NCBI RefSeq assembly: GCF_044704955.1
Contig: NC_091984.1
Span: 145,576,001-145,640,000, forward strand
Origin: Pristiophorus japonicus
Taxonomy: Eukaryota
Direction: 5' to 3'
Length of the DNA stretch: 64,000 bases
Every line of letters starts with the position of its first letter. Position 1 is the first letter of the stretch. Positions 10,336 through 51,709 of the stretch are shown here, one piece after another. A program made the position numbers and the translations under genes. The notes under the pieces were generated by a model. That model saw only the letters and a program-made list of their open reading frames with translations. It did no database searches and was not told where the DNA came from.

Positions 10336-11022
10336 TAATCCGTAATACCCTTACCCAACAGGGTGCTGATGATGCCGGAGAACCAGCCTGAGCCTCAGAT
10401 CCTGAACTGTCCACTGCAACACTGGACTGAGACACAGAGGGAGCAGAGTGTGTGCAAAGTGGTGACTGGCTGGTCCGCTGGTCCCCGAGACCCCTCCCCG
10501 ACCCCACAGTCCCAACAGGATCCCCCCCCTCGATACCCAGCACCCAGTCCCACCAGAGCCCCTGACCTCCCCGTGACCCCCATGATCCCCCACCCACCGA
10601 TCACGCCGGTCCCCCCCGTTCCACGCACAGTCAGCCCCCGATAAAGCCCACCCTCCCCCGGCCCGGTCTCCCCTCTCCTGGGTAACAGTCTTGCACACAC
10701 ATACACACACCTACAGACAGTGCTGGGTAACAGTCACACACACACACACACACACACACCTACAGGCAGTGCTGGGTAAGTCACACTAACACTCAGGGAC
10801 ATGTACACGGTGATACACTGACTGCTCCTCTCCCTAAGCTGAGGCCTCACTTGGTACAGTTTTGTGCTGCTGCCATGAGCCACACGTTAAGGAGAGAGAA
10901 TGCAACATTGTGACTGTGGCCTCCTGCCCCCAGATTGCTCCCAGCAGTCAGCACATGGTGGGATCGCACTGTGCACTATCGGGGGCAGCCCCAACAATCC
11001 CAGTGTGCAGAGTGAGAGCCAA

Positions 11023-12131
11023 CAAGCTCCCCGCTGGAGTGGAACTAAACCAAAGAACCAGTGGGAACCTGTTCAACCTGCACAGTCTCCAGGCCAGATC
11101 CAAGGCCACTCCAACCTCTGTCGTCGAGCTACAGTATGTGGACGATGTCCGCATCTGCGCACATACAGAGGACGCACTCCAGGACATAGTCGACGTATTT
11201 ACTGAGGCGTACGAAAGCATGGGCCTTACGCTAAACATCTGTAAGACAAAGGTCCTCCACCAGCCTGCCCTCATCACACAGCACTGCCCCCAGTCATCAA
11301 GATCCATGGCGCTGCCCTGGACACCGTGGACCACTTCCCATATCTCGGGAGCCACCAATCAACAAGAGCAGGTATTGACGACGAGATCCAACACCGCATC
11401 CAGTGCGCCAGTGCAGCCTTCGGTCACCTGAGGAAAAGAGTGTTTGAAGACCAGGCCCTCCAAACTGCCACCAAGCTCATGGTCTACAGGGCTGTAGTAA
11501 TAGCTGCCCTCCAATATGGCTCAGAGACATGGACCATGTACAGCAGACACCTCAAGTTGCTGGACAAATATCACCAACGATGTCTCTGCTAGATCCGACA
11601 AATCCCCTGGGAGGACAGGCACACCAACATCAGCGTCCTCAGTCAGGCTAACATCCCCAGCATTGAAGCACTGCCCACACTCGATAGCTCCGCTGGGCAG
11701 GCCACATAGTCCGCATGCTAGACACGAGACTCCCAAAGCAAGTGCTCTACTCGGAGCTCCTTCATGGCAAACGAGCCAAAGATGGGCAGCGGAAACGCTG
11801 CAAGGACACCCTCAAAGCCTCCCTGATAAAGTGCAACATCTCCACTGACACCTGGGAGTCCCTGGCCCAAGACCACCCTAAGTGGAGGAAGTGCATCCGA
11901 CAGGGCGCTGAGCACCTCGAGTCTCGTCGCCAAGAGCATGCAGAAACCAAGCGCAGGCAGCGGAAAGAGCGTGCGGCGAATCTGTCCCCACCCACCCCTT
12001 CCCTCAATGACTGTCTGTCTCACCTGTGACTGAGTCTGTGGTTCTCGTATTGGACTGTTCAGCCACAAAAGAACTCACTTCAGGATGGAAGCAAGTCTTT
12101 CTTGATTCCGAGGGACTGCCGATGATATGAT
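11023..12131 (+). mobile_element. RTE-clade LINE 3' fragment
   Basis: ELQYVDD..AHTEDALQ..GLTLNICKTKVL, FPYLGS, LQYGSETWT and RLPKQVLYSEL motifs; (TGA)n-like tail; absent from the paralogous site at ~51257. Confidence 0.9.
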
Positions 12132-12270
12132 GAGACTGGGAGGGTTTAATCCCAGCAGCTTTTAGTGTCTCTGTGTTTAATCTTGTGCACTCCAGGGGTT
12201 CGAGGTCAAATTGATCGTTTTAAAATGATTGATAATTGGCTTTGAATCAAATCTCCTGCCGACATGCCAT

Positions 12271-12354
12271 TGATTGACAGCCCACTCAGCCAATCAGGAC
12301 AGACACTTACTGAAATGCAGCCAATCCAGCTGAGGGGGAAGGTGGGACATTTCC
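12271..12354 (+). promoter_or_regulatory. Candidate PBX-PREP/MEIS decamer + double CCAAT + kB-like module 3' of the left C exon
   Basis: TGATTGACAG 12271-12280, CCAAT 12290-12294 and 12321-12325, GGGACATTTCC ~12344-12354; retained in the paralog at 51034-51116. Confidence 0.45.
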
Positions 12355-12486
12355 AAAGCACTCGCCAGACACAGACTGAATATTATTCACGTTTATTGCC
12401 TTTTACAGATTCACATTTAGAGAAACAAGACTTGAATAAACAGCCCAGCGAGAGCGAGCTGGAGACATTCACAGGGAGAATGCAGC

Positions 12487-12492
12487 TTTATT
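12487..12492 (-). terminator. Polyadenylation signal of the left C exon (second AATAAA at 12392-12397)
   Basis: TTTATT on the + strand ~430 nt downstream of the stop; positionally conserved with 50896-50901. Confidence 0.65.
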
Positions 12493-12921
12493 AAAACAGT
12501 TGTGGGGATTTTCGCCACACCGTGAGAAACCTGTCCCTTTAAACGGGGACTAAACATTGAATTGTAACAGCAGGGTGAGCAGGGAGGGGGTCTGCTTACT
12601 GAAGCGGCACTTCGTAGTTTAACATTAGTTTTACTCTGCTGACAGTCTTCAGCATTTTTGAGAGGTTTTACTTGGCAGCACGAGTCAACACTGTCCCATC
12701 AAACCCTCCCAGGGCAGGTACAGCACGGGTTAGATACAGAGTAAAGCTCCAATGACACTGCCCCAATAACGTGCCTTCCCCCTGACCCTCAGATGCTTTC
12801 CCTGACCCAGTCCCGAGAAGGAAGAGAGTAGAAATGCAGTGCTGACAATGACCTTTGCCCTCCCGGCTCACCCCCTGTTCTATTTAAAGTTGTGTCTCCC
12901 CCGCGGACTGTCCCTGACACA

Positions 12922-13250
12922 CTACGCACATTCTGCTCTCCTGACTCCCTTGCTGAGGGGAGAGGAGAGGCTCTCGTGGGTGAGGCTGCAGGAGAAGCTG
13001 GCGTTGGACTCCCAGTCGGAGCCAGAGAGGGTCAGCAGGCTGCTGACACTGTAGGTGTTGTCCGAAGCTCGCAGGTAGTCGCTGGTCTGGACCCCGGCCG
13101 AAATGGTCGCCCCGTCCTTCTTCCACTCCATCTCCACCGCATCGGGGTAGAAGTGATCGGCGAGGCACACCAGGGTGGCAGTGCCCTTGGTCGTGACCTC
13201 CTCCGGGGAGGGGGGCAGCAGGGTCAACGTGGGTGGTGTCTTCCCTCGGC
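12922..13250 (-). CDS. IGKC: Ig kappa-type light-chain constant exon, intact, apparently orphan (C-left)
   Basis: Acceptor tctatttcag|GC CGA; (S)RGKTPPTLTLLPPSPEEVTTKGTATLVCLADHFYP..VEMEWKKDG..YSVSSLLTLS..W..FSCSLTHESLSSPLSKGVRRAECA*; C1-set Cys/Trp/Cys and penultimate Cys. Confidence 0.95.
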
Positions 13251-13499
13251 CTGAAATAGAGGAGAAGGATCTTTAGTAGGTGTATATTAGTGTGTGTGTG
13301 TGTGTCTCTGTGGGTGTTTCCGTGTGGGGATAATTCACATCTGATAACGGAGAGTTGGGTTAATGAACTCCTGGCTGGCGATTAACCATTAGAGGTGAGC
13401 AACACTAATTCTTAATCTTCTTTGCCTCGCTTGATAAGTTTAATATAAATGTAAATGCGTTTGAAGTTAAGGTTTTTAAAAAAAAAAAATCTTTCATTT

Positions 13500-13948
13500 C
13501 TATTATGCCTTTCACAACCACCGGACATCTCAAAGCACTTTTCAGCCAATGAAGTACTTTTGGAGTGTCGTCACTGTTGTCATGTGGGAAACACAGCAGT
13601 CAATCTGCGCACAGCAAGCTCCCACAAACAGCGATGTGATAATGACCTGATAATCTGTTCTTTTGTCATGTTGGTTGAGGGATAAATATTGACCAGGGCA
13701 CCGGGGAGAACTCCCCTGCTCTTCTTCAAAATAGGGGCATTGGATCTTTTACATCTATCTGAGAGGGCAGACGAGGCCTCAATTTAAAATTTCATCTGAA
13801 AGACGACACCTCCAACAGTGTTGCACTCCCTCAGCACTGCCCTGCAGTGTTAGCCTAGATTTTTGTGCTCAAATGCCTGGTGTGGGATTTGAACCCACAA
13901 TATTCTGAATCAGAGGCGAGAGTGCAACGCACTGAGCCACGGCTGATG
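13500..13948 (-). mobile_element. Deu-domain SINE in the C-proximal intron (paralogs 49370-49830 and 59890-60186)
   Basis: tRNA-like head with B-box (GGGTTCAAATCCC on the - strand), Deu core, L2-like tail. Confidence 0.8.
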
Positions 13949-14864
13949 CTCAAAATCATACTGGGGTGAGGTCAAGGGTGAGGCTACAATTAGCCTCAGT
14001 GTTCCAGGGTCAGGCAGGGTCACTGCTCCCAATGATCCCGTGACCTCCTGGAAGGTCAGAGTGCATGGACAATGGCCGAGGGTCAGGATCAGGGCCCTCC
14101 CACTTCAATGAAAGAAAGCCTTGAATTTATATCGCGCCTTTCACAACCTCAGGATGTCCCAAGGTGCTTTACAACCAATTGTACACAGGGAGATTTACGA
14201 GGATGTTGCCTGGACTGGAAAATTTTAGCTATGAAGAAAGATTGGATAGGCTGGGGTTGTTTTCTTTGGAATAGAGGAGTCTGAGGGGAGACCTTATTGA
14301 GTTGTATAATATTATGAGGGGCCGAGATAGAGTGGATAGGACGGACCTATTTCCTTAAGCAGATTGGCCAACAACCAGGGCATAGATTTTAAAGTAATTG
14401 CTCGGAGGTTTAGAGGGGATTTGAGGGGAAATGTCTTCACCCAGAGCGGGTGGGGGGTCTGGAAGTCACTGACTGAAAGGGTGGTAGAGGCAGAAACTCT
14501 CATCACTTTAAAAAATTACTTGGATGTACACTTGAAGTGCTGTAACCTACAGGGCTACGGACCAAGAGCTGAAAAGTATGATTAGGCTGGATAGATCTTT
14601 GCCGGCCAGTGCAGACACGATGGGTCGAATGGCCTCCTTTCACGCTGTAAATTTCTCTGATTCTATGAAGCTCCCAGACTGCAATGAGATCATGACCAGA
14701 TCATCGGCTTTAACTATGTTAGTTGTGGGATAAATATTGGCCAGGACACTGAGAAGAACCCCCATGCCCTTCCAATAATGATTATGAGATCTTTCATGTT
14801 CACTTAAGAGGGCAGATGGGAATTCGGTTTAACGTCTCATCTGAAAGACGGCACCTCTGACAGA

Positions 14865-17800
14865 GGGAGGATATGTTTGAAGGATCATCAAATGAGGCCA
14901 TATGGTTTAAACTGATGAACAGAAAAGGGACGATCACACTGCTGGGAGTGTACTATCGACCCCTAAACAGTCAGAGGAAGATAGAAGAGAAAATATGTCG
15001 GCAAATTGCTGAGAAGTGCAAAAACAATCGGGCAGCAATAGTCCCCTCACATTAACTGGGATGGAATCATGTCAAAGGTATAGAGGGTGCAGAATTCTTC
15101 AAATGAATTCAGGAGAACTTTTACAGCCAGTACGTAGCAAGCCCAGCAAGGGAGGCACAGTTCTGGGCTTAGTTTTTGGGAATGAAGCTGGGCAGGTGGA
15201 AGGGAGATCAGTGAGAGAGCATTGTGGTGCTCGTGATCATAATTCAGTTAGATTTAGTGTAGTTATGGAAAAGGACAAAGGTAGAGCAGGAATAAAGGTT
15301 CTCAATTGGGGAAAGGCCAATTTTACTAAGCTGAGAGGTGATTTAGCAAAAGTGGGCTGGAAACAGCTACTTGAAGGTAAATCAGTGTCAGAGCAGTGGG
15401 AGGCATTCAAGGGGGAGATAGTGAGGGTTCAGAGCAAGTATGTTCCCACAAAGGAAAAGGGTGGCACTCCCAAATCTAGAGCCCCCTGGATGCCAAAGGG
15501 CATACAGGATAGGTTATGGCAAAAAAGGGAAGCTTATGTCAGATACCCAGAGCTAAATACTGCAGAAAGCCCAGAGGTGTATAGAAAGTGCAGGGGTGAA
15601 ATTAAAAAGGAAATTCGAAATGCAAAGAGAGGGCATGAAAAAATACTGCCAAGTAAAATCAAGGAATACTCAAAGATGTTTTATAAATACATAAAGAGCA
15701 AGAGGATAACTAAAGAAAGAGTTGGGCCTATTGGAGACCAAAAAGGTACCCTGTGTGTGGAGGCGGAAGACGGGGGAATGGTTCTTAATGAATATTTTGC
15801 ATCTGTCTTCACAGAAGAGAGGGACGATGCAGACATTGTAATTAAGGAGGACAAGTGTGAAATATTAGATGAGATAAACATAGTGAGAGAAGAAGTATTA
15901 AGGAGCTTAGCATCTTTGATCGTAGAAAAATCACCAGGCCCGGATGAAATGTATCCCAGACTTTTAAGAGAAGCAAGCGGGGATATAGCAGAGGCCTTGA
16001 CCATCATTTTCCAATCTACTCTGGCTACAAGTGTGGTGCCGGAGGACTGGAGGACTGCTAACGTGTACCTTTGTTTGAAAAGTGAGAACGGGATAGACCG
16101 AGTAATTACAGGCCAGTCAGCCGAACCTTGGTGGAGGGAAAATTATTGGAAACAATAATTGTCATATAGAAAGGGACATATTAATCAAGGACAGTCAGCA
16201 TGGATTTATTCAGGGAAGGTCGTGCCTGACTAACTTGATTTAATTTTTTGCGAAGATAACAAGGAGAGTCGATGAGTTTTGCATCTTTGATGTCGTACAC
16301 ATGGACTTTTGCAAGGTTTTTGGTGAGGTCTCACATGGCAGAAAAGTAAAAAGCCCAGGGATCCAAGGGAAAGTGGCAAGTTGGATCCAAAATTGGCTCA
16401 GTGGCAGGAAGCAAAGTGTAATGATCAACGGGTGTTTTTGTGACTGGAAGGCTGTTTCATGTGGGGTTTCAAGCCAGGTTTGCTGATAATACAAAGATGG
16501 GAGGAAAAGCAATGTGTGATGAGGATACAAAAAACCTGCAAAAAGACAGACAGGCAAAGTGAGTGGGCAAAAATTTGGCAGATCGAGTATAATGTTGGAA
16601 AGTGTGAGGTTATGCACATTGGCAGAAAAAAAATCAAAGAGCAAGTTATTATTTCAATGGAGAAAAATTGCAAAGTGCTGTAGTACAGCGGGACCTGGGG
16701 GTACTTGTGCATGAAACACAAAAGGATAGTATGCAGGTTCAGCAAGTGATCAGGAAGGCCAATGGAATCTTGGCCATTATTGCAATGGGGATGGAGTATA
16801 AAAGCAGGGAAGTCTAGCTACAGTTATACAGGGTATTGGTGAGGCCATAGCTGGAATATTGCGTGCAGTTTTGGCTTCAATATTTAAGAAAGGATTGACT
16901 TGCTTTGGAGGCAGTTCAGAGAAGGTTCACTAGGTTGATTCCAGAGATGAGGGGGGTTGTCTTTTGAAGAAAAGTTGAGTAGCTTGGGCCTCGACTCATT
17001 GGAATTCAGAAGAATGAGAGGTGATCTTATCACATGTAAGATTATGAGGTGCCATGCAAGGTGGATGCAGAGAGGATGTTTCCACTGATAGGGGAGACTA
17101 GAACTAGGGGGCTTAATCTTAGAATAAGTGGCCGCCCATTTAAAACTGAGATGAGGAGGAATTTCTTCTCTCAGAATCTTTAATCTCTAAGTATTCTCTA
17201 ATCTCCAGATTACTCCCGGTGCCACGAGCTAATGAGTACAGAAATAGGAGGATAGAGCAGATGAATGCGTGACGGGAGAGATGGTGCAGGCGGGATGCTT
17301 TAGTTTCCTGAGGCATTGGGACCGCTTCTGGGGGAGGTGGGACCTGTACAAGCCGACCGGGTTGCTCCTCAACAGAGCCGGGACCAATAGCCACGAGTGG
17401 GGCATTTGCTCGTGCTGTTGGGGAGGGTTTAAACTAGCTTGGCAGGGGGATGGGAACCGGAGAATAGATTCAGTAGGGAGGCGAGTAAAGCTGGAATTAG
17501 AAAGCAAAAATAAGGAAAGTGAGTTTGAAGGAGAGAGGAAACAAGCAGATAAAAAGGGTAAAAAAACAAATTTAAAGGCACTTTGCCGAAATAACAAAAT
17601 AGCTGAGTTGATGGCACAAATAGATAAAATGAATATGATCTGATAGCCATTACAGAGACGTGGTTGCAAGGTGACCAGGACTGAGAACTAAATACTCAGG
17701 AGTCCTTGACAATCCGGAAAGGACAGACAGAAAGGTAAAGTAGGTGGGGTAGCTCTGTTGACAAAGGATGGAATTACTGCAATAGTGAGAAATTATATTG

Positions 17801-37570: not shown

Positions 37571-38044
37571 GGTTTTACACATGACTGACACACAGCTCGA
37601 TGGGAGTGACGGCAGGAATATTCAGCTGGAAGCTGCAGTGAATTGGGAAAGGATGGAGTGGGTCAGAGAGGAGTTGGGGCTGTGTCTTCATCACTGACAA
37701 TCTCACAGCTCTACTCTGTACATTCAGACAGCACGGAGACACTGGGTGGTCCTGTGTCCTCAATCCAAATAATCTCACAAACCCCCCACTATTGAGAGGG
37801 CCACAACTTATTAAACCCAAAGCATAAACATGAAAGGAAAGTGAACAAGTGAAATGGTCGTGCTCTTTCCCTGCCCACCCCACACTCCAGGCCCTGCGGT
37901 GCCCACCCATCGCAGAAGGCCTCAGGCCTACCCTGGGCTCCATCCCCAGGGCCACCCGGGTGTGGACAACGCCCCCGAAGGGAGACAGGCAGGCAGTGCG
38001 ACCACCCCATGGGCCCCGTCCAACTGCGACCTGTGAATGGTCAC

Positions 38045-39060: not shown

Positions 39061-39072
39061 GCCAGGGACGGA

Positions 39073-39111
39073 GGATATTGTACAGCCGCTGCACTGGAAG
39101 CTGTCACTGTG
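39073..39111 (-). other. J 23-RSS
   Basis: GGATATTGT (nonamer, 7/9) + 23-nt spacer ACAGCCGCTGCACTGGAAGCTGT + CACTGTG (consensus heptamer on the - strand). Confidence 0.9.
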
Positions 39112-39146
39112 GCTCACGTTCGGTAAAGGAACCAAGCTCAGACTGA
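39112..39146 (+). CDS. IGKJ: Ig kappa-type J segment
   Basis: G CTC ACG TTC GGT AAA GGA ACC AAG CTC AGA CTG A|GTAAGT = LTFGKGTKLRL(S); FGxGT motif; the phase-1 donor fits the C acceptor. Confidence 0.95.
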
Positions 39147-40231
39147 GTAAGTAAACCCCAATGCTCCGTTGTTAACACTTTAAATACTGAATCTTTCTTA
39201 GACACAAATGCTGAATATGCGAAGGTGTTTGTTTACATATGATTACGTTTGATCCTCCCATCTTTCCTCATCTAAATCTATCAGCATAACCCTCTATTCC
39301 CTTCTCCCTCATATCCCTGTCTAGCCTCCCCTTAAATACATCGATACTATTCACTTCAATCACTCCCTGTGGTAGCCAGTTCCACATTCTCACCAGTCTC
39401 TGGGTAAAGAATGTTCTCCTGAATTACCGATTGGATTTCTTGCTGACTATCTTATATTGATGGCCTCTAGTTCTGCTCTTCCCCACAAGTGGAAACACTC
39501 TCTCTGTATCCACTCTATCAAATCCTTTCCTAATGTAAAAGAACTCTATCAGGTCACCCCTCAGCCTCAAGAGAAAAGAGCCCCAGCCTGTTCATCCTTT
39601 CCTGATATGTATATCCTCGCATTTCTGGTCCCATCCTTGTAAACCTTTACTGCACCCTCTCCAGTGCCTGTGTATGGGTTTTATAATGTGGTGGGGAGCT
39701 GCGGTGAATGAAAGGGTTAATTGAAGAATGCTGTGTATGACAGGGAGCCCGGCTGTATTCCTTTACCCACACTCCCCCTTCACCCAGCAAAGTATAAGTA
39801 ACGAACTGTTACCCACCGTGTGGAGGAGATCTGGACGTTGGCACACTGCGGTCCCATCCCTGCACCATCCCCGGAAATCGCTCCCGAGCCTCCTGCCTGT
39901 CTCAGTGTGACAGACACGGTGTGTGAGACACGGTCAGAGTGTGGGTGTGAGTGAGTGAGCTCGCTGGGGGCAGTCTGTGCTCCTGTCACAGTCTCTGATA
40001 TAACTGGGCTCAGCCTCAGCACACTGACGCTCCCGAGGTCCCACCTCCCCCAGCTCCAACTCTGATCTGTCCAGCCCCCGCTCACCTCCTGTCCAACTTC
40101 TGATCACAAACAGGGGCAGCAGGGCTCGCAATCCGGCGGCTGCAGTGCTCCAGGGTTGTGGGGAGACTCTCAGTTGCTGTTTCTGTGGCTCGAGTTCAGG
40201 CCGATATTTATCCCTCAAACTACATCACTTA

Positions 40232-42172
40232 AACATAGAAAATAGGAGCAGTAGTAGGCCATTCAGCCCTTCGAGTCTGCACCGACATTCAATATGATCA
40301 TGTCTGATCCCCTGTCTCAACACCATATTCCCTCTTTTTCCCTATACCCTTTGATGCCTTTTGTAAGCCAAGGGGGAAGCCATTTAGGACCGAGATGAGG
40401 AGAAACTTCTTCACCCAGAGAGTGGTGAACCTGTGGAATTCTCTACCACAGAAAGTTGTTGAGGCCAATTCACTAAATATATTAAAAAAGGCGTTGGATG
40501 AAGTCCTTACTACTAGGGGGATCAAGGGGTATGGCAAGAAAGCAGGAATGGGGTACTGAAGTTGCATGTTCAGACATGAACTCATTGAATGGTGGTGCAG
40601 GCTAGAAGGGCCGAATGGCCTACTCCTGCACCTATTTTCTATGTTTCTATGTTTCTAGAAATCCATCTATCTGCCTCTTAAATATATTCAGTGATTTGGC
40701 CTCCACAGCCTTCTGTGGTGGAGAATTCCACAGGTTCTCCACCCTCTGAGTGAAAACATTTCTCCTCATCTCGGTCCTAAATTTCCTGCCTCGTATCCTG
40801 AGATTGTGACCACTTATTCTAAACTTCCCAGCCCGGGAAAACATCCTCCCCAGATCCAGTCTATCCAACCCAGTCAGAATTTTATATGTTTCAATGAGAT
40901 CCCCTCATTCTTCTAAACTCTAGTGACTGCAGGCCCAGTCGACCCAATCTCTTTTTATACGACAGTCCTGCCATCCCAGGAATCAGTCTGGTGAACCTTC
41001 GCTGCACTCCCTCTATGGCAAGGATATCCTTTCTTAGGTAAGGAGACCAAAGCTGCACATAATACTCCAGGTGCGGTCTCACCAAGGCCCTGTAGTAAGA
41101 CCTCGTTGCTCAAATCCTCTTCCAATGAAGGCCAATGTACCATTTGCTTTCCTAACTGCTTGCTGCACCTGTATGTTTGCTTTCACTGACTGGTGTACAA
41201 GAACACCCAGGTCCCTCTGTACATCGACACTTCACAAACCATCACCATTTAAATAATACTTTGTCCTTATGTTTTTCCTACCAAAGTGAGTAACTTCACA
41301 TTTATCCACAATATGTTACATCTGTCATGTGTTTGCTCACTCATTCAACCTATCTAAGTTTCATTGCATCCTCCTCACAACTCATAATCCCATCTAATTT
41401 TGTGCTGTCAGCAAACTTGGAAATATTACATTTGGTTCCCTCATTCAAATCATTTATTTATACATTGTGAATATCTGGGGCCCAAGCACTGATCCCTGTG
41501 GTACCCCACTCGTCACTGCCCGCCACCCTGAAACACACCCATTTATTCCGACTGTTTCCTGTCAGTTAACCAATTTTCAATCCATGCCAATACATTACCC
41601 ACAATCCTATGTGCTTTAATTTTGCACACTAACTTCTTATGTGGGATTTTTATCGAAAGCCTTCTGAAAATCCAAATACACAACATCCACTGGTTCTCCA
41701 TTATATATTCTATCAGTTAGATCCTCAAAAAACTCCAGTAGGTTCCTTTCATAAATCCACGTGACTGTCTTTAACCCCGTTGATGTTATCTAAGTGCGCC
41801 GTTATCACATCCTTTATAATAGACTCTAGCATTTTCCCTATTAATGACCGGTCTGTAGTTCCCCGTTTTCTCTCTCTCTCCCTCCTTTTTTAAATAGTGG
41901 GGTTACATTTGCCACCCTCCAATCTGCAGGAACTGTTCTATAATCTATAGAATTTTGGAAGATGACAATCAATGGATCTACTATTTCCACGGCTACCTCT
42001 TTTAATACTCTGGGATGCAGATCATCAGACCCTGGGGATTTATCGGCCTTCAGGCCCATTAGTTTCTCCAGCACTATTTTCTTACTAATAATCATTTCCT
42101 TTAATTCCTCTTGTTCACTGGACCCATGGTTCACGAGCATTTCTGGGAAGTTATTTGTATCCTCCTCCGTGA
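40232..42172 (-). mobile_element. CR1 ORF2 fragment with a nested young + strand CR1 3' end (~40365-40635)
   Basis: KSPGSDDLHPRVLKE and VRPHLEYYVQLWSP on the - strand; nested piece ends in (TTTCTATG)n. Confidence 0.88.
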
Positions 42173-42896
42173 AGAGAACATTTATCTCAGTGCTGTGTGT
42201 GGGAGCTTGCTGTGCACAATTTGGCTCCCGTGTTGGCCACATTACAACAGTGACTACACTTCAAAATGTACTTCATTGGCTGTGAAGCACTTTGGAACAT
42301 CCTGAGGTGTGAAAGGTGCTATATAAATGCAGGTCTTTCTTTAATTTCTCTTTTCTTTTTGTTAACTGGGACTCGCACAATTCCCCTGCTGATTAAACTT
42401 GGACCCAGCAGAAAATCCTCAGATCACGGACTAACGTTCCATAAGAACATGGGAATTAGGAGCAGGAGGAGGCCATTTGGCCCCTCGAGCCTGCTCCACC
42501 ATTCAATGAGATCATGCCTGTCTTCTACCTCAACTCCACTTTCCTGCACTGTCCCCATATCCATCGATCCCTTAATATCCAAAAATCTATCGATCTCCGG
42601 AATATACTCAAGGACTGAGCCTCCACAGCCCTCTGGGGTAGAGAATTCCAGAGATTCACCACCCTCTGAATGAAGAGGTTTCTCCTCATCTCAGTCCTAA
42701 ATGGTCGACCCCTTATTCTGAGACTGTGACCCCTGGTTCTAGACTTCCCAGCCAGAGGAAACATCTTCCCTGCATCTACCCTGTCAAGCCCTGTCAGAAT
42801 ATTGTATGATTCAATGAGATCCCCTCTCATTCTTCGAAACACTAGAGAATATAAGCCTAATATACTCGATCTCTCCATAGGACAATCCCCCCATCC

Positions 42897-43130
42897 CAGA
42901 TGTCCGTCTGATGTGTTTGCGTGTTTGTCACACGTGACGGAGCAGATGTTCCACCAGCAACACAGGACGTTACCTCAGTGCCCGGCCCACTTTCCCCATC
43001 CACTTACCACATTCTTACAGGTAAACGGGCTCAGCACCTGCCCTCGGCCGGTGAAATGTCTCCCCTCTACACCACAGGCTGCCCGTCATCTGCTCCCAAT
43101 CTCACTCCTGAAGGCACTACCTCTGGCTGG
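42897..43130 (+). promoter_or_regulatory. Candidate J-C intronic enhancer (E-box cluster)
   Basis: CAGATG 42897, CACGTG 42931, CAGATG 42943, CACCTG 43035 and CATCTG 43087 in a non-repeat block duplicated at ~54411-54650. Confidence 0.4.
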
Positions 43131-43142
43131 GGCTCAGCTCCT

Positions 43143-43322
43143 CTCCCCAAGTGGGCTCACTGTCCCAGTGTGAGCCTAGAGACTGAGCTCCCCAAGTGGG
43201 CTCACTGTCCCAGTGTGAGCCCAGAGACTGAGCTCCCCAAATGGCCTCATTGTCCCAGTGTGAGCCCAGAGACTGAGCTCCCCAAGTGGGCTCATTGTCC
43301 CAGTGTGAGTCCAGAGAGTGAG
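43143..43322. repeat. 45-bp tandem repeat x4 with an internal inverted repeat
   Basis: CTCCCCAAGTGGGCTCACTGTCCCAGTGTGAGCCCAGAGACTGAG; single copy in the paralog at ~54666-54710. Confidence 0.9.
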
Positions 43323-43974
43323 CGTGTCAGGCTAATCGACCGTGAGGTGTCAGCCGTGGCTCAGTCGCTAGCATGCTCGGTTCTGAGAAAAGGAAGATTT
43401 GCATTTATATAGCGCCTTTCACGACCACCAGACATCCCAAAGTGCTTTACAGCCAATGAAGTACTTTTTGAAGTGTACTCACTGTTGTAATGTGGGAAAC
43501 TCAGCAGCCAATTTGTGCACAGCAAGCTCCCACAAACAGCAATGTGCTGATGACCAAATAACCTGTTTTTGTTCCGTTGATTGTGGGATAAATATTGGCC
43601 AGGACACCGGAGTTTGATTAGAACCCACAATCTCTGACTCAGAAGCGAGGGTGGTTCCAACTGAGCCACTGGCTGATACCATTCGGCCCATCGTGTCCGT
43701 GCCAGCCGACAAAGATCTATCCAGCCTAATCCCACTTTCCAGCTCTGGGTCCGTAGCTCTGTAGGTTACGGCACTTCAAGTGCACATCCAAGTACTACTT
43801 AAATGTGGTGAGGGTTTCTGCCTCTACCACCCTTTCAGGTAGTGAGTTCCAGACCCCCACCACCCTCTGGATGAAAAGGATTCTCCTCAACTACCCACTA
43901 ATCGTTCTATCAATTACTTTAAATCTGTGACACCTGGTTAGTGACCCTGCTGCAGAGGGAAATAGGTCTTGTCC

Positions 43975-45830
43975 GCATCCTCCGCCAGGATCAACTGGGA
44001 AATGTTCCGCACTCCTGGTGGGTCAGTGGCAGGTGGACTCCCTGCCGGAGGAGCTCAGGCCTTTTGCCTAGAGCACAACCCATCTCCTCTATCTGGGAGT
44101 TTACCTGAGCCCTGACGAGGAAGCCTGGCCGGCGAACTGTCAGGAGCTGGAGGCCAAAGTCGCCGCTCACCTAGGGCGCTAGACAGGACTGCTCCGAGTG
44201 CTGTCCTACAGGGGTCCAGTGCTAGTCATAAACCAGCTGGTGGCCTCCATGCTGTGGTACCGGCTGGTCACTTTGACCCCTCCCCCTGCGTTTGTCGCCA
44301 AGATACAGAAGAAGCTGGTGGACTTCTTCTGGAACAACAGGAAACATTGGGTCTTTGCTGCGGTTTTAAGTCTCCCGCTTAGGGAGGGTGGTCAGGCGTC
44401 GGTGTGCATCAGTACCCAGCATGCGACTTTCCGTCTTCAGACCCTACAGAGATACCTGTATGTCGAGCCCCCTCCTAGGTGCATTGGGGACGTATTTCTT
44501 CCGCCAGCAGTACTGCCTCAATTATGACACGCAGCTCCTGTTTGTGAGCCTGGGAGGCATCAAGACCCCCATACAGGGGCTTCCTGTCTTTTACCAGGAA
44601 TTCATCAGAGTCTGGAACAGTGTCGCCACCAAGCGCAGGTCTCCCCCGTCTGGAGTGGCAGCTGTCCTGCAGGAGCCGCTGCTCAGGAATCTGTACCTCC
44701 ATGACCGCGGTTTTAGGTGGCAGGCAGACGAGAGTGCTGTGGCTGGCGAGGTGACCAGGATCAGGGATCTGCTCGATGGCGGAGGAGCGGGCTGGATGGT
44801 GCCAGACGTGGTCGGACGTTGCCTAAACTGGGTCAACATCCAGCGCGCGGCCAATGCCATCGAGTCGCTAAAAACAGCACTGGTCCCTGACTCCGTTAGG
44901 TGTGCCGTGGAGGCTCAAGCACGTGGGCCGATCCCCTCCGAACTGACCCCCGTCCAGACAGAATTCCTCATCGCACCAAGCCCCGAAACCTCCTTTGGGA
45001 GCCGGCGCCTCCCAACTTGAGCCTCCTCGGGGAAATCCCCTCCGTGCCTTTCAGTTCCGCGCGGAGGGGTTTCCTGTACGGGCTGCTCCTGCACACTCTC
45101 AACCTTGCCATCCTCGTCTGCCGTCCAGACATGCCATGGCGTACCATCTTGTCGTCCGGAGGAGGCGGGGGTCCCCAGTGGAGTGCACTCTACGCAGGAG
45201 TCCTCCCTCTATTTATTGGGGACTTGGCCTGGAGGGTGTTGCACGGAGCACTCCCATGCAATAAGTTTTTAAGTCGGTTCACGGGCTCCCAGGCCGCCTG
45301 CAATTTCTGCTGTCTGGAAGAGTCCGTGTTCCTTGTTTTTATGGAGTGTGTGAGGTTGCAGCCCCTCTTCTGTTATTTGAAGGGGCTGCTCCTCAAATTC
45401 TGGTTGCACTTCAGTCCCATACTCCTGATCTTTGGGCACCCTGTGCGGAGAGGAGCGGGCAGATCAGAAGGCCTCCCCGTAGGACTGCTCCTCGGCATGG
45501 GCAAGGGGGCCATTAGCCGGTCCAGGCAGCGGGCGGTCGAGGGGGTTGTTCATCCTGACTGCCTGCCTCTCTTCCTCGGTTACATCCGAGCCAGGGTATC
45601 CCTGGAGCTGGAGCACGCGGTGTCCACCGGTACGCTCGCGGCCTTCCACGAGAGGTGGGCACCGGAGGGACTGGAGTGCATCATCACCCCCGGCAACCAA
45701 ATTTTAATTTGATCATTTAATTTTATAGTTTAATTTGTTTAATTTGCCAGTTTTAGTGCCCCCCCCCCCTTTTTGGCCCAGGGAACACTTGTATAATTTG
45801 TGTGTTGGTGCCCTCAAAAAAAAAAAGGGC
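43975..45830 (+). mobile_element. Tx1-like L1-clade element, 3' part (RT C-terminus plus zf-RVT-like Cys motif)
   Basis: LSYRGPVLVINQLVASMLWY, DLAWRVLHGALP..CNFCCLEESVFLVFMEC; frameshifted; A-run at ~45816. Confidence 0.85.
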
Positions 45831-45914
45831 ACTGGAAAAATGTATCTTGGTGTATGACCCTCCCCCCGCCCCCCTTCAGGGGGCATTTGTTTAAAGTGCA
45901 CAAATAAAATAGTT

Positions 45915-48145
45915 GTGGGAAATAGGTCCTCCTTAACCACTCTATCTCGGCCCCTCATAATTTTATACACCTCAATTAAATCTCCCCTCAGCCTCCTCTG
46001 CTCCAAAGAAAATAACCCAGCCTATCCAATCTTTCATCATAACTAAAATTTTCCAGTCCTGGTAACATCCTCGTAAATCTCCTTTGTACTCTAGCTGTGG
46101 CCGAACTACTATTTTAAACAGTTATAGCATAACCTCCCTGCTCTTATATTCAATGCCACGACTAATAAAGGCAAGTGTCCCATATGCCTTCTTAGCCACC
46201 TTATCTACCTGGCCTGCTACCTTCAAGGGATCTGTGGTCCTGCACTCCAAGGTCCCTTTGTTCCTCTACACTTCTCAGGGTCCTACCATTTAATGTGTCT
46301 TCTCTTGCCTTGTTAGCCTTCCCCAAATGCATTACCTCACAGTTCTCTGCATTGAAATCCATTTGCCACTGTTCTGCCCACCTGACCAGTCCATTGATAC
46401 CTTCCTGAAGTCTACAGCTTTCTTCCTCACTATCATCTGCAAACTTCTTAATCATGTTCCCGAAATTGAAGTCTAAATCATTGGTGTATATTACAAAGAG
46501 TAAGGGACTGAGTACTGAGCCCTACGGAACCCCACTCGAAACAGCCTTCCAGTCACCAAAACACCCGTTGACCATTACACTTGGCTTCCTGCCACTGAGC
46601 CAATTTTGGATCCAACTTGCTACTTTCCCTTGGATCCCATGGGCTTTTACTTTTCTGCCACATGAGACTTTGCCAAATGCCTTGCAAAAATCCATGTAGA
46701 CTACATCAAAGGTGCAACACTCATCGACCCTCCTTGTTATCTCCGCAAAAAATTCACTCAAGTTAGTCAGGCACGACCTTCCCTTAACAATTCCACGCTG
46801 ACTGTCCTTGATTAATCTGTCGCTTTCTATATGACAATTTATCCTCTCCCTCAGAATTGTTTCCAATAATTTTCCCACCACCGAGGTTAGGCTGACTGGC
46901 CTGTAATTACTCGGTCTATCCCTTTCTCACTTTTTAAACAAAGGTACACGTTAGCAGTCCTCCAGTCCTCCGACACCACACCTGGAGCCAGAGAGGATTG
47001 GAAAATGATGGTCATAGCCTCTGCTATTTCCTCCCTTGCTTTTCTTAACAACCTGGGATACATTTTGATCTGGGCTTGGTGATTTATCCATTTTCAAAGC
47101 TGCTAAGCCCCTCAATACTTCCTCTCTCGCTATGTTTATCTTATCTCATATTTCACACTTCTCCTCCTGAATTACAATGTCTGCATCGTCCCTCTCTTCT
47201 GTGAAGACAGATGCAAAGTATTCACAAAGAACCATACCCACGTCTTCCGTCTCATCACACAGGTTATCTTTTTGGTCTCCAATAGGCCCCACTCTTGCCT
47301 TGCTCTTTATGTATTTATAAAACATCTTTGGGTTTTCCTTGATATTACTTGCCAATATGTTTTCATGCCCTCTCTTTGCATTCCTAATTTCCTTTTTAAT
47401 TTCACCCCTGCACTTTCTAAACTTCTCTGGGCTTTCTGCAGTATTTAGCTCTGGGTATCTGACATAAGCTTCCCTTTTTTGCCTTATCCTACCCTGTATG
47501 CCCTTTGCCATCCAGGGGCTCTAGATTTGGGAGTGCCACCCTTTTCCTTTGTGGGAACATACTTGCTCTGAACCCTCACTATCTCCCCGTTGAATACCTC
47601 CCACTGCTCTGACACTGATTTACCTTCAAGCAGCTGTTTCCAGCCCACTTTTGCTAAATCACCTCTCAGCTTAGTAAAATGGGCCTTTCCCCAATTGAGA
47701 ACCTTTATTCCTGCTCTATCTTTGTCCTTTTCCATAACTACGCTAAATCTAACTGAATTATAATCACTAGCACCAAAATGCTCTCCCACTGATACCCCTT
47801 CCACCTGCCCAGCTTCATTCCTTAAAACTAAGTCCAGAAACGCCCCCTCCCTTGTTGGGCTTGCTACGTACTGGCTATAACAGTTCTCCTGAATGCATTT
47901 GAAGAATTCTGCGACCTCTGTACCTTTGACACTGATTCCATCCCAGTTAATGTGAGGGGAGTTGAAATCCCCGACTATTGCTGCCCGATTTTTTTTGACC
48001 TTCTCAGCAATTTGCCGACATGTTTTCTCTTCTATCTCCCTCTGACTGTTTAGGGGTCGATAGTACACTCCCAGCAGTGTGATCGCCCCTTTTCTGTTCA
48101 TCATTTTAACCCATATGGACTCATTTGATGATCCTTCTAACATAT
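45915..48145 (-). mobile_element. Degenerate CR1 ORF2
   Basis: ORFs 47484-48143 (endonuclease) and 46522-46881 (RT); mirrored at 14865-16465. Confidence 0.9.
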
Positions 48146-50069
48146 CCTCCCTCTGTCAGAGGTGCTGTCTTTCAGATGAGACGTTAAACCAAAGTCCCGT
48201 CTGCCCTCTCAGGTGGACATGAAAGATCCCATAATTACTACTGGAAGGGCAAGGGGGTTCTTCCCAGTGTCCTGGCCAATATTTATCCCACAACAAACAT
48301 AGTTAAAACTGATGATCTGGTCATGATCTCATTGCAGTCTGGGAGCTTCATAGAATCAGAGAAATTTACAGCCTGAAAGGAGGCCATTCAGCCCATCGTG
48401 TCTGCGCCGGCCGACAAAGATCTATCCACCTTATCCCAGCTCTTGGTCCGTAGCCCTGTGGGTTACGGCATTTCAAGTGTACATCCAAGTACTTCTTAAA
48501 TGTGCTAAGAGTTTCTGCCTCTACCATCCTTTCAGGCAGTGAGTTCCAGACCCCCACCACCCTCTGGGTGATGACATTTCCCCTCAAATCCCCTCTAAAT
48601 CTCCGACCAATCACTTTAGATCTGTGCCCTGGTTATTGAGCCCTATGCTAAGTGAAATGGGTCCGTCTTATCCTTGCTATCGAGGGCCCTCATAATTTTA
48701 TACACCTCAATAAGGTCTCCCCTCAGCCTCCTCTGTTCCAAAGAAAACAACACCAGCCTATCCAATCTTTCCTCATGGCTAAAATTTTGCAGTCCAGGCA
48801 ACATCCTCGTAAACCTTCCTGTGTGCAATTGGTTGTGAAGCAACTTCGGAAGTCCTGAGGTTGTGAAAGGCGCTATATAAATTCAAGGCTTTCTTTCATT
48901 GAAGTGGGTGGGCCCTGATCCTGACCCTCAGCCATTGTCCGCGCACTCTGACCTTCCAGGAGGTCACGGGATCATTGGGAGCAGTGACCTTGCCTGACCC
49001 CTGTACACTGAGGCTAATTGTAGCCTCACCATTGACCTCACCCCGGTGCTGGGCAGCAAGCTTTTAAATGCAATCTAGAAGCTTCTACACCGACACCAAC
49101 ATGAAGCCTTGCTGAAGTGTGTTGAGACAAGTGTGCCGCAATGTTCCCGGATAAAGTTCTCCCGATCTGTGTGTGATCTGAGATTTCTCACTGCTGAGCC
49201 TGTTTCCCCTGTATCCACCCATCTACAGTTCGAGCTTCCTGCCAGTGAACAGTGTCTTAACGGGACACTCAGTCTTTACCGACTCTTACTGTTAACCATT
49301 TCAGTGCTGAATGTGTGCCAACCCTGCACTGCAGATGTTTATACAACAGTCCAATCTGATTTTGAGTATCAGCTGTTGCTCAGTGTGTTGCACTCTCGCA
49401 TCTGAGTCAGAAGGTTGTGGGATCAAGTCCCACTCTACGGACTTGAGCACAAAAATCGAGGCTGACACTCCAGTGCAGTGCTGAGGGAGCGCCGCACTGT
49501 CGGAGGGGCCGTCTTTCGGATGAGATGTAAAACCGAGGCCCCGTCTGCCCTCTCAGGTAGATGTAAAAGATCCCATGCCACTATTTTGAAGAAGAGCAGG
49601 GGAGTTCTCCCCGTGTCCTGGTCAATATTTAAACCTCAACCAACATGACAAAAGAACAGATTATCAGGTCGTCATCACATCGCTGTTTGTGGGAGCTTGC
49701 TGTGCGCAGATTGGCTGCCGTGTTTCCCACATTACAACAGTGACTGCACTCCAAAAGTACTTCATTGGCTGTAAAGTGCTTTGAGATGTCCGGTGGTTGT
49801 GAAAGTTGCAATATAAATGCAATATTTCCTTTTTTTTTTTAATCACCTTAATATCAAACGCATTTATATTTCGATCAAACTGATCAAGTGAGGCATAGAA
49901 GATTAAGAATTAGTGTTGTTCGCCTCGAATGGTTAATCACCAGCCAGGAGTTCATTAACCCAACTCTCCGTTATCAGATGTGAATTATCCCCACACGGAA
50001 ACACCCACAGTGACACACACACACACACACTAATATACACCTATTAAACATCCTTCTCCTCCCTTTCAG

Positions 50070-50398
50070 GCCGAGGGAAGACACCACCCACGCTGACCCT
50101 GCTGCCCCCCTCCACGGAGGAGGTCACGACCAAGGGCACTGCCACCCTGGTGTGCCTCGCCGATCACTTCTACCCCGATGCGGTGGAGGTGGAGTGGAAG
50201 AAGGACGGGGTGACCATTTCGGCCGGGGTCCAGACCAGCGACTACCTGCGAGCTTCGGACAACACCTACAGTGTCAGCAGCCTGCTGACCCTCTCTGGCT
50301 CCGACTGGGAGTCCAACGCCAGCTTCTCCTGCAGCCTCACCCACGAGAGCCTCTCCTCTCCCCTCAGCAAGGGAGTCAGGAGAGCAGAATGTGCGTAG
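50070..50398 (+). CDS. IGKC: Ig kappa-type light-chain constant exon of the V-J-C cluster (C-right)
   Basis: Acceptor ccctttcag|GC CGA; in frame with J (..KLRL-S-RGKTPPTLTLLPPSTEEV..CLADHFYP..W..FSCSLTH..AECA*). Confidence 0.97.
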
Positions 50399-50895
50399 TG
50401 TGTCAGGGACAGTCCGCGGGGGAGACGCAACTTTAAATAGAACAGGGGGTGAGCCGGGAGGGCAAAGGTCATTGTCAGCACTGCATTTCTACTCTCTTCC
50501 TTCTCGGGACTGGGTCAGGGAAAGCATCTGAGGTTCAGGGGGTAAGGCAAGTTATTGGGGCAGTGTCAGGGGAGCTTTACTCTGTATCTAACCCGTCCTG
50601 AACATGCCCTGGGAGTGTTTGATGGGACAGTGTAGAGGGAGCTTTACTCTGTATCTAACCTGTGCTGTACCTGCCCTGGGAGGGTTTGATGGGACAATGC
50701 TGACTCGTGCTGCCAAGTAAAACCTCTCGAAGATGCTGAAGACTGTCAGCAGAGTAAAACTAATGTTAAATTGCAAAGTGCCGCTTCAGTAAGCAGACCT
50801 CCTCCCTGCTCACCCTGATGTTGCAATTCAAGGTTTAGTCCCCGTTTAAAGGGACAGGATTCTCACGGTGTGGAGAAAATCCCCACAACTGTTTT

Positions 50896-50901
50896 AATAA
50901 A
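50896..50901 (+). terminator. Polyadenylation signal (second AATAAA at 50991-50996)
   Basis: AATAAA ~500 nt after the stop, followed by GT-rich sequence; conserved in the left copy. Confidence 0.65.
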
Positions 50902-51033
50902 GCTGCATTCTCCCTGTGAATGTCTCCAGCTCACTCTCACTGGGCTGTTTATTCAAGTCTTGTTTCTCTAAACATGAATCTGTAAAAGGTAATAAACGTG
51001 AAGAATATTCAGTCTGTGTCTGGCGAGTGCTTT

Positions 51034-51116
51034 GGAAATGCCCCTCCTCCCCCTCAGCTGGATTGGCTGCATTTCAGTAAGTGTCTGTCCTGATTGGCTA
51101 GGTGGGCTGTCAATCA
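51034..51116 (-). promoter_or_regulatory. Candidate PBX-PREP/MEIS decamer + double CCAAT + kB-like module 3' of C-right
   Basis: CTGTCAATCA 51107-51116, ATTGG 51093-51097 and 51062-51066, GGAAATGCCCC ~51034-51044. Confidence 0.45.
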
Positions 51117-51709
51117 GTGGCACGAGAGCAGGAGATTTGTTTTGAAGCCAATTATCAATCATTTTAAAACAATCAATTTGACCTCGAACCCCTGGAGTGC
51201 ACAAGATTAAACACAGAGACACTAAAAGCTGCTGGGATTAAACCCTCCCAGTCTGAGCATTGGTTCTCACTCTGCACACTGGGGGTGTTGGGACAGCCCC
51301 GATAGTGGGATCGCACTGTGCACTTGTGCTGACTGCTGGGGGGAAATCTGGGGGCAGGAGGCCAAGGTCACAACGTTGCATTCTCTCTCCTTAACGTGTG
51401 GCTCGTGACAGCAGCACAAAACTGTACCGAGTGAGGCCTCAGCTTCGGGAGAGGAGCAGTCAGTGTATCACTGTGTACATGTCCCTGAATGTTAGTGTGT
51501 CTTACCCAGCACCGCGTGTAGGTGTGTGTGTGTGTGTGTGTGAGTGTTACCCAGCACTGTTATGTCGGCCTGAGGAGTGCTCCGCGGTGATGCGGTCTTT
51601 AAGGGACTGTGAGGGAGCAGGGGAGTGGAGGGGTGACCAGGGCGATGATCAAGGGCTGACCATGTGTGGAATGGTGGGGACCAGGGCGATCGGGGGGGTG
51701 TTCTCAGGG

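What the first reader, a model, noticed from the sequence alone, without database searches (positions are those of the whole stretch)
10690..51560. One V-J pair between two oppositely oriented, intact C-kappa exons: geometry of an invertible V-J cassette
Seen: ~5-6 kb inverted arms (10690-16465 and 46525-51560) each carry an intact C exon with acceptor, stop and poly(A) signals, plus >3 kb of shared J-C intron. Only one promoter-L-V-J lies between them. Established: cartilaginous-fish light-chain genes are normally self-contained V-J-C clusters. Inference: one crossover between the intronic parts of the arms (13253-16465 x 46525-50067) would invert the ~30 kb interior and place the same V-J in correct splicing orientation to C-left. 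That could be a germline inversion polymorphism or a somatic flip between two C allotypes. Nothing in the sequence shows that this inversion actually happens.
Basis: partly seen in the sequence, partly recalled or inferred. Interest (0 to 1): 0.8.

Follow-up and report, generated by a model that had tools for sequence, protein, structure and literature searches.

The report
Inverted orphan C-kappa beside shark cluster
A normal shark-type kappa antibody light-chain gene (one V, one J, one C) has a second, intact but V-less and J-less constant exon lying backwards 23 kb upstream in an old mirror-image copy; it is most likely an unused leftover kept fresh by copying between sister genes, not a DNA switch.

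Summary
The window has one unrearranged L-V (12-RSS), one J (23-RSS) and C-right on the + strand. A second intact C exon, C-left, lies on the - strand in an inverted copy of about 5-7 kb that is 89-94% identical to the right arm. No other V, J, C or RSS exists in the 64 kb.

Nothing shows that this inversion happens, and several results speak against a purposeful switch:
- The intronic arms are mostly LINE fragments, about 9% diverged, with perfect tracts of 71 nt or less.
- The arms carry no RSS.
- The two C exons differ by only 3 residues.
- Three RNA-like runs read V, not C-left's M, at codon 40.

C-left's intactness does not need function. Exon divergence is 1.2% at silent and replacement sites alike, against 9.3% in the intron, which points to homogenisation. 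Where C-left is in the genomic minority, C-right carries the majority letter.

This scan had already noted the same architecture on other DNA of this genome (about -0.88 Mb and -1.74 Mb). The whole unit therefore appears to have been copied en bloc. Orientation could not be tested, because the available contigs are only about 80 nt long.

The parts
9543..16468 (-). Left arm: an inverted partial copy of a kappa cluster (3' part of the J-C intron, C exon, 3'UTR and 3' flank). The flank at 9543-12132 is rearranged relative to the right arm.
   Evidence: blastn self-comparison and arm-to-arm comparison; MAFFT alignment of the arms
12922..13250 (-). C-left exon including the TAG stop. It is an intact C1-set domain with no V or J upstream on its strand.
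   Evidence: Sequence; Pfam C1-set E=1.3e-23; 105/108 aa identical to C-right; 4 nt differences
12492..12497 (-). AATAAA 429 nt after the C-left stop, in a context conserved with the right arm
13251..16468 (-). Left copy of the 3' part of the J-C intron. It is mostly LINE fragments, including a 380-aa ORF at 15016-16158 on the + strand.
   Evidence: very high k-mer depth in the DNA run
36513..36566 (+). V promoter elements: octamer-like ATTTACAT (36513) and TATAAA (36561)
   Evidence: sequence
36626..36674 (+). Leader exon (ATG at 36626, donor GT at 36675)
   Evidence: sequence
36850..37148 (+). V-kappa-like exon, unrearranged. It has the [10 protein letters not shown]1 motif, WYQQK and YYCQQ.
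   Evidence: Pfam V-set E=3.2e-18; best solved-structure matches are V-kappa-type domains (DIQMTQSP...YYCQQ)
37149..37176 (+). V 12-RSS: CACTGTG, 12 nt, ACAAAAACC
37184..38411 (.). V-J spacer enlarged by tandem arrays: 61 bp x6.3 at 37184-37570 and 64 bp x5.8 at 38044-38411
39073..39111 (+). J 23-RSS: nonamer GGATATTGT, 23 nt, CACTGTG
39112..39146 (+). J segment (LTFGKGTKLRL) with donor GTAAGT at 39147
39147..50069 (+). J-C intron of the complete cluster (10.9 kb, TE-rich). Its last 3.5 kb is the right arm's intronic part.
46528..51951 (+). Right arm, the counterpart of the left arm
50070..50398 (+). C-right exon including the TAG stop
   Evidence: Pfam C1-set E=1.9e-24
50896..50901 (+). AATAAA 497 nt after the C-right stop

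Best explanation
The window holds one ordinary, apparently functional cartilaginous-fish kappa-type minicluster: promoter, L-V with 12-RSS, J with 23-RSS, a 10.9-kb TE-filled intron, and C-right. About 23 kb upstream, on the opposite strand, lies the 3' portion of an old mirror-image copy of such a cluster: distal intron, C-left and 3' flank.

C-left has no V, J, RSS or recognisable promoter on its strand, so it cannot make a light chain on its own. It is an orphan. Whether the copy was truncated when it was made, or was a head-to-head sister cluster that later lost V-J among LINE insertions, is not resolved.

Inference: the exon is still intact because the C exon and 3'UTR of this multicopy family are homogenised by gene conversion (concerted evolution), not because C-left is used. 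A further inference from depth figures and earlier notes is that the whole unit, inverted C plus cluster, was later copied en bloc several times along the chromosome.

A crossover between the arms is geometrically possible and would simply swap which C is the orphan. If it ever happens, it should be a rare, neutral structural variant.
For: Shown here:
- Only one V, one J and two C exons are present in 64 kb. Only two good RSS are present, those of V and J. The region from the V promoter to 40370 has no second copy in the window.
- The arms are 89-94% identical with 63 or more gaps. Their intronic parts carry LINE endonuclease/RT fragments.
- Arm-to-arm divergence is 1.2% in the C exon (pS=0.0123, pN=0.0124), 4.2% in the 3'UTR and 9.3% in the intron. 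P(1 or fewer silent differences at the intron rate) = 0.003; P(4 or fewer differences in 324 nt) = 1e-9. The equal deficit at silent and replacement sites and in the UTR fits homogenisation, not protein-level selection alone.
- In DNA run X1, an exact 97-nt unitig of the exon has depth about 1780, against about 50 for the arm-specific unitigs of lowest depth. That indicates tens of near-identical C copies.
- At all 10 places where C-left's letter is the minority in X1, C-right has the majority letter. No sign therefore points to exchange specifically between the two arms.
- RNA-like runs X5, X6 and X8 (exon covered, adjacent intron bin at depth 0) carry V, not C-left's M, at codon 40.

Leads not checked here: earlier notes of this scan describe the same architecture about 0.88 Mb and 1.74 Mb upstream and on another piece of this genome. 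Exact arm unitigs at depth 150-207, against 48-68 for others, fit 3-4 near-identical unit copies (tentative).
Against: - C-left shows no decay at all. Acceptor, frame, stop and poly(A) signal are intact, and it is closer to the family majority (1 private exon change) than C-right is (3). That would also fit a used gene.
- The three or so sister units reportedly all keep an intact inverted C.
- Contigs drop rare variants, so the absence of the M variant from RNA contigs is not evidence of silence.
- Orientation was never tested with spanning reads.
- Copy numbers rest on an assumed single-copy depth of about 50.
Confidence: 0.72

Rival explanations
1. Germline inversion polymorphism. Non-allelic homologous recombination between the inverted arms occasionally flips the ~30-kb interior. 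Some haplotypes or sister units then have V-J facing C-left, and the two states are selectively equivalent.
For: - The inverted arms of 5-7 kb lie 30 kb apart, and the geometry is right.
- A 215-nt perfect tract (12894-13108) and 97-99.5% identity over about 500 nt around the exon could support exchange.
- Both products would be functional, so nothing selects against either state.
- The family shows signs of ongoing gene conversion.
Against: - Intronic identity is only about 91%, with perfect tracts of 71 nt or less and many indels.
- From my own knowledge, recurrent NAHR inversions such as FLNA-EMD and F8 int22h use repeats more than 99% identical.
- There is no sign of exchange specifically between the two arms.
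- The sister units noted by the scan are described with the same orientation (unchecked).
Confidence: 0.1
2. Programmed or somatic flip in B cells. The V-J cassette is inverted during B-cell development or response, so that the same V-J is expressed with the alternative C allotype.
For: Only the geometry. By analogy, inversional rearrangements between IgL clusters exist in zebrafish (PMC3014032), and switching between IgH clusters is reported in sharks (PMC5192425).
Against: - There is no RSS or other recombination signal in or near the arms, and C-left has no J. The zebrafish mechanism needs V and J RSS of opposite polarity.
- The two C regions differ by 3 conservative residues, so there is no functional pay-off.
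- The M variant of C-left was not seen in RNA-like contigs of three samples.
- Reviews state that shark V-J joining stays within a cluster and is deletional.
Confidence: 0.02
3. Assembly artefact. The left arm is a mis-joined or falsely duplicated copy of another kappa cluster's 3' end, placed in inverted orientation by the assembler in a highly repetitive multicopy region.
For: - The region belongs to a family of tens of near-identical copies embedded in very abundant TEs, a setting prone to mis-joins.
- The only DNA run with a large share is probably the assembly's own source, and its contigs (about 80 nt) cannot confirm the joins.
Against: - The arms differ by about 9% with many indels and a rearranged flank. 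This is not a fold-back or a haplotype duplicate.
- Arm-specific exact unitigs and the C-left M-codon letter are present in the reads.
- The same architecture with the same 23-kb spacing is reported at other places in the genome (unchecked).
Confidence: 0.05

Closest known systems
Cartilaginous-fish IgL kappa (type III / NS4-like) V-J-C minicluster
   Same: One L-V with 12-RSS, one J with 23-RSS and one C1-set C exon, all in the same orientation and unrearranged in the germline. It belongs to a family of many copies; nurse shark has about 60 kappa genes (PMC5192425).
   Different: - The V-J gap is 1.96 kb, against the 250-500 bp cited for sharks. Two tandem arrays enlarge it.
- The J-C intron is 10.9 kb and full of LINEs.
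- An additional inverted C exon without V-J lies 23 kb upstream. I found this described in none of the papers I could search.
Zebrafish/teleost IgL clusters with opposite polarity and inversional inter-cluster rearrangement (Zimmerman et al. 2008, PMC3014032)
   Same: Closely linked IgL elements lie in opposite orientation, and inversion can re-pair a V(-J) with a different C.
   Different: That mechanism is RAG-mediated joining of a V RSS to a J RSS of opposite polarity. Here the inverted element is a bare C exon without J or RSS, so RAG cannot do it. Only homologous recombination or break-and-rejoin in the intron could.
NAHR inversion polymorphisms between inverted segmental duplications (e.g. 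human FLNA-EMD 11.3-kb repeats, F8 int22h; from my own knowledge)
   Same: Two multi-kb inverted repeats flank a tens-of-kb segment. One crossover flips the interior without loss of sequence.
   Different: The known recurrent cases have repeats of about 99% identity or more. Here identity is 89-94%, with short perfect tracts. No second orientation has been observed.
Orphan or pseudogene constant-region copies in duplicated Ig loci (e.g. catfish IGH duplicates with pseudo-Cmu; J-C lambda pseudogenes in mammals, from my own knowledge)
   Same: A constant-region exon copied without a working V(D)J partner, as a by-product of segmental duplication.
   Different: This copy is inverted, fully intact and very close to the family consensus, apparently refreshed by gene conversion.

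Membership tests
Kappa-type Ig light-chain minicluster (cartilaginous fish) | Split leader plus a V-set exon with conserved Cys23, Trp41 and Cys104 and kappa-like framework motifs | tested here: met
   Sequence; V-set E=3.2e-18; best solved-structure matches are V-kappa-type domains (DIQMTQSP...YYCQQ)
Kappa-type Ig light-chain minicluster (cartilaginous fish) | 12-RSS on V and 23-RSS on J (the kappa polarity), in the same orientation, so joining is deletional | tested here: met
   37149-37176 has a 12-nt spacer with 1+0 mismatches; 39073-39111 has a 23-nt spacer with 0+2 mismatches
Kappa-type Ig light-chain minicluster (cartilaginous fish) | Single C1-set C exon downstream of J, with acceptor, stop and poly(A) signal | tested here: met
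   C-right 50070-50398, C1-set E=1.9e-24, AATAAA at 50896
Kappa-type Ig light-chain minicluster (cartilaginous fish) | Phylogenetic placement of C with kappa and not with lambda, sigma or sigma-2 | not tested
   No tree was built. The word-index protein search returned only two mislabelled fragments. The isotype call rests on the V motifs and the RSS polarity.
C-left as a self-contained cluster | Own V and J (or a joined VJ) upstream on the same strand | tested here: not met
   No V or J on the - strand anywhere from 13251 to 64000. No RSS there. The J-like motifs at 25071-25184 are LINE reverse-transcriptase sequence.
Invertible DNA element (NAHR-type inversion polymorphism or programmed switch) | Inverted repeats flanking the invertible segment | tested here: met
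Invertible DNA element (NAHR-type inversion polymorphism or programmed switch) | Both orientations observed in reads, individuals or cell types | tested here: inconclusive
   The single read-laying run returned only contigs of about 60-520 nt. None spans an arm.
Invertible DNA element (NAHR-type inversion polymorphism or programmed switch) | Recombination substrate: long tracts of near-perfect identity, or specific recombinase/RAG signals at the arm ends | tested here: not met
   Intron divergence is 9.3%, with perfect tracts of 71 nt or less; the only 215-nt tract lies in the exon and UTR. No RSS in the arms.
Invertible DNA element (NAHR-type inversion polymorphism or programmed switch) | The two states differ in output | tested here: not met
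   The C exons differ by 3 of 108 residues (P/T, M/V, A/V), and each state occurs elsewhere in the family.
Teleost-type inversional inter-cluster V-J rearrangement | V and J RSS of opposite polarity in neighbouring clusters | tested here: not met
   Only one V RSS and one J RSS are present, facing each other for deletional joining.

The most novel reading that the evidence does not exclude
The inverted-C architecture is a real flip-flop. Recombination between the arms, or break-and-rejoin within the two J-C introns, inverts the V-J cassette in the germline of some animals or in some B cells, so that one V-J can be expressed with either of two C exons. The architecture would be retained in several sister units because of this. 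It would be the first antigen-receptor locus in which the constant region is chosen by homology-driven inversion and not by RAG or class-switch deletion.
Probability: 0.06. Interest if true: 0.75.

Novelty: new variant of a known kind. Interest (0 to 1): 0.3.

Why it matters
Shark light-chain genes are textbook self-contained V-J-C cassettes, all in one orientation. A recurring unit with an extra, intact, backwards C exon shows two things. The clusters grow by messy inverted and en-bloc segmental duplication, and gene conversion keeps even unusable C exons looking functional. That is a warning for gene counts based on 'intact C exons' in shark genomes. If, against the odds, the cassette does flip, it would be a new way to pair a V-J with a constant region.

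Tried and rejected
I stopped that step.
2. Looked for a second V or J, or their relics: tblastn at E up to 50, blastn of 36000-46600 against the window, strict and relaxed RSS scans. Nothing was found. The FGxG-like motifs at 25071-25184 (-) are LINE reverse-transcriptase sequence.
3. Tested a large, strictly colinear palindrome (a head-to-head sister cluster). Extra inverted matches exist (24188-24861 with 44639-43977; 25196-26119 with 46996-46086), but their order is not colinear. The origin is left open.
4. Read laying for orientation: all four runs are Logan contigs, and the DNA contigs are about 80 nt, so no join could be verified.
5. The search for homologous proteins with the C-left exon, to reach sister loci: it returned only two fragments filed under Aeromonas and Salmonella, at 81-84% identity. 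Full-length light chains fall outside the length window for a 108-aa query.
6. Orphan 23-RSS behind C, a lead from earlier notes: absent behind both C exons here.
7. Literature: I found no paper describing inverted orphan C exons in shark IgL clusters.
Full report
OBSERVATION

The window contains one complete, unrearranged kappa-type light-chain cluster on the + strand. Its parts are:
- an octamer-like ATTTACAT (36513) and TATAAA (36561);
- leader exon 36626-36674 and V exon 36850-37148;
- a 12-RSS at 37149-37176 (CACTGTG, 12 nt, ACAAAAACC);
- a 23-RSS at 39073-39111;
- J 39112-39146 (LTFGKGTKLRL) with donor GTAAGT;
- C-right 50070-50398 after a 10.9-kb intron.

A second C exon, C-left, lies on the - strand at 13250-12922. 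Its polypyrimidine-AG acceptor, reading frame and TAG stop are intact. AATAAA lies 429 nt downstream in a context conserved with the right copy. Pfam calls both C exons C1-set (E about 1e-24) and the V exon V-set. The V aligns best with V-kappa-type domains (DIQMTQSP...YYCQQ) of solved antibodies. The 12/23 polarity is that of kappa.

tblastn of each exon separately against all six frames found no other V, J or C.

I stopped that step and worked exon by exon from coordinates.

THE ARMS

Self-comparison gives 12133-16468 against 51254-46528 at 89-94% identity. A more sensitive comparison extends a colinear inverted chain to 9543 on the left and 51951 on the right. Within it, the 3' flank is locally rearranged: left 11023-12132 matches right 52060-52751.

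The arms are not a clean pair of unique sequences:
- Their intronic parts carry LINE endonuclease/RT fragments.
- Further partial copies lie at 7827-9507, 25196-26119, 59094-60186 and 61893-63882.
- In the DNA run, most intronic bins have enormous k-mer depth.

Still, the two arms are colinear and closer to each other than to the other in-window copies (81-84%). They therefore descend from one inverted duplication that already contained those elements.

IS THERE A PARTNER FOR C-LEFT?

No. On the - strand between 13251 and the window's end there is no V, no J and no RSS. The region from the V promoter to 40370 has no second copy in the window. Two J-like motifs at 25071-25184 are LINE reverse-transcriptase sequence. 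C-left is an orphan.

Some inverted matches lie deeper in the interior: 24188-24861 with 44639-43977 at 87%, and a LINE copy at 25196-26119. GC skew is also mirror-imaged, positive over 14-24 kb and negative over 40-50 kb. Both would fit a former head-to-head sister cluster with a long intron. However, the order of the matches is not colinear. I therefore leave open whether V-J was lost later or was never copied.

WHY IS C-LEFT INTACT?

Arm-to-arm divergence, by region:

| Region | Divergence | Detail |
|---|---|---|
| Shared intron | 9.3% | 298 mismatches, 370 gap columns |
| 3'UTR | 4.2% | |
| C coding exon | 1.2% | 4 differences in 324 nt: 3 replacement, 1 silent; pS=0.0123, pN=0.0124 |

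- At the intron rate, one or fewer silent differences has P=0.003.
- At the intron rate, four or fewer differences in the exon has P=1e-9.
- Identity peaks at 99.5% over 12829-13128, which runs into the UTR. The longest perfect tract, 215 nt, is 12894-13108.

A deficit that is equal at silent and replacement sites and spills into the UTR is the signature of homogenisation (gene conversion, concerted evolution). It is not the signature of selection on the protein alone.

The laid runs add the family context:
- In DNA run X1, an exact 97-nt exon unitig has depth about 1780, against about 50 for the least abundant arm-specific unitigs. The C exon therefore exists in tens of near-identical copies. 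This rests on an assumed single-copy depth.
- At codon 40 (place 13131), about 96% of the DNA depth and all three RNA-like runs read V (GTG), not C-left's M (ATG).
- At the P/T, A/V and silent sites (13206, 13109, 13227), no other letter reaches 10%. C-left's states are therefore the family majority there, and C-right's are private or rare.

On their own they cannot assign a transcript to C-left or C-right.

At all 10 places where C-left's letter is the minority in X1, C-right has the majority letter. I see no sign of exchange specifically between the two arms.

EXPRESSION

Runs X5, X6 and X8 come from the same organism but from other samples. They cover the C exon and 3'UTR, with zero depth in the adjacent intron bin. 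They therefore behave like RNA, although their kind is not on record. Their contigs differ from C-left at 4-12 places and carry V at codon 40. C genes of this family are expressed, but nothing shows expression of C-left. Contigs drop rare variants, so this is not proof of silence.

ORIENTATION AND ASSEMBLY

No arm or join could be bridged. An artefact is unlikely for three reasons:
- The arms differ by about 9%, with many indels and a rearranged flank.
- Arm-specific exact unitigs and the M-codon letter are present in the reads.
- Earlier notes of this scan report the same architecture elsewhere in this genome.

RECURRENCE

These are leads from the scan's own notes, not verified here.
- Notes s1-874485 (about 0.88 Mb upstream) and s1-874513 (about 1.74 Mb upstream) describe the same 'one V-J between two inverted intact C' geometry. 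A follow-up of s1-874485 read it as an inert leftover with the same 23-kb spacing.
- s1-876546 describes a similar case on another piece.
- s1-874790 describes a 'ghost' about 0.86 Mb downstream.

The near-regular spacing of about 0.86-0.88 Mb suggests en-bloc copying of large units. In X1, exact arm unitigs fall into depth classes of about 48-68 and about 150-207, and the M-codon letter has depth about 171. That would fit 3-4 nearly identical unit copies. This is tentative. If it is right, the recurrence reflects recent copying, not independent maintenance.

COULD IT FLIP?

Geometrically, yes. An exchange anywhere between the shared intron and the 3'UTR would put J about 10.6 kb upstream of C-left and would make C-right the orphan.

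Mechanistically the substrate is poor:
- Identity in the intron is about 91%, with perfect tracts of 71 nt or less.
- From my own knowledge, known recurrent NAHR inversions use repeats of about 99% identity.
- RAG cannot do it, because the arms carry no RSS and C-left has no J.

Functionally, the two C regions differ by three conservative residues, so there is nothing obvious to gain.

Reviews state that shark V-J joining is deletional and stays within a cluster, and that teleosts, not sharks, use inversional rearrangement. I found no paper describing inverted orphan C exons beside shark clusters.

VERDICT

- The best reading is an orphan C exon in an old inverted partial cluster copy, kept intact by family-wide homogenisation and propagated by en-bloc duplication (confidence about 0.7).
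- A neutral germline inversion polymorphism remains possible (about 0.1).
- A programmed somatic flip is very unlikely (about 0.02).
- An assembly artefact is unlikely (about 0.05).
- The scan had already found this architecture on other DNA of this genome.

Noticed in passing
window 37184-37570 and 38044-38411: Two tandem arrays lie between V and J: 61 bp x6.3 at 99% identity, starting 8 nt after the V nonamer, and 64 bp x5.8 at 93%. With a GA-rich tract at 38782-39052, they stretch the V-J gap to 1.96 kb, against the 250-500 bp cited for shark clusters. Each 61-bp unit carries a weak heptamer-like CACAGTT.
   Followed up: partly
window 19034-19490 and 29185-29640: An inverted pair of 452-457 nt at 94% identity, 9.7 kb apart inside the interior. 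It has no match to the V-J region or to the arms. Another first-reader note (s1-874860) calls part of it a non-repeat module with an Ets-IRF site. Its nature is unknown.
   Followed up: no
window 7830-9507 and 61946-63630; 59094-60186: A second, outer inverted pair of LINE copies at 90% identity has the same relative orientation as the inner arms. A third copy of the proximal J-C intron piece (91% to 48578-49666) is not followed by any C exon. This hints at a larger, degraded nested palindrome or at a 'ghost' cluster fragment downstream of C-right.
   Followed up: partly
proteins P0001 and P0002: The only database proteins of 59-189 aa matching the C exon (84% and 81% identity) are filed as Aeromonas veronii and Salmonella enterica proteins on contigs of 507 and 990 nt. 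They are almost certainly fish or shark light-chain contamination in bacterial assemblies.
   Followed up: no
window 14000-24000 versus 40000-50000: Strand composition is mirror-imaged. GC skew is +0.16 to +0.33 on the left and -0.03 to -0.33 on the right. This is as expected if TE orientation relative to an old - strand transcription unit was copied or retained on the left.
   Followed up: no
window 15016-16158 (+): A 380-aa open frame lies in the left arm's LINE copy and has no Pfam hit. The shorter homologous frame in the right arm (47484-48143, -) matches the endonuclease-RT family.
   Followed up: partly
window 35351-35855: A 41-bp x12 tandem array (higher-order period 164 bp) lies about 0.8 kb upstream of the V promoter, in a GC-rich stretch.
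   Followed up: no
window 12556, 12615, 12656, 12659, 12893, 13131: Six C-left letters are the minority in the DNA run. Five of them are T where the family has C on the + strand, that is G-to-A on the C-left coding strand. This is a transition-only pattern of private change.
   Followed up: partly
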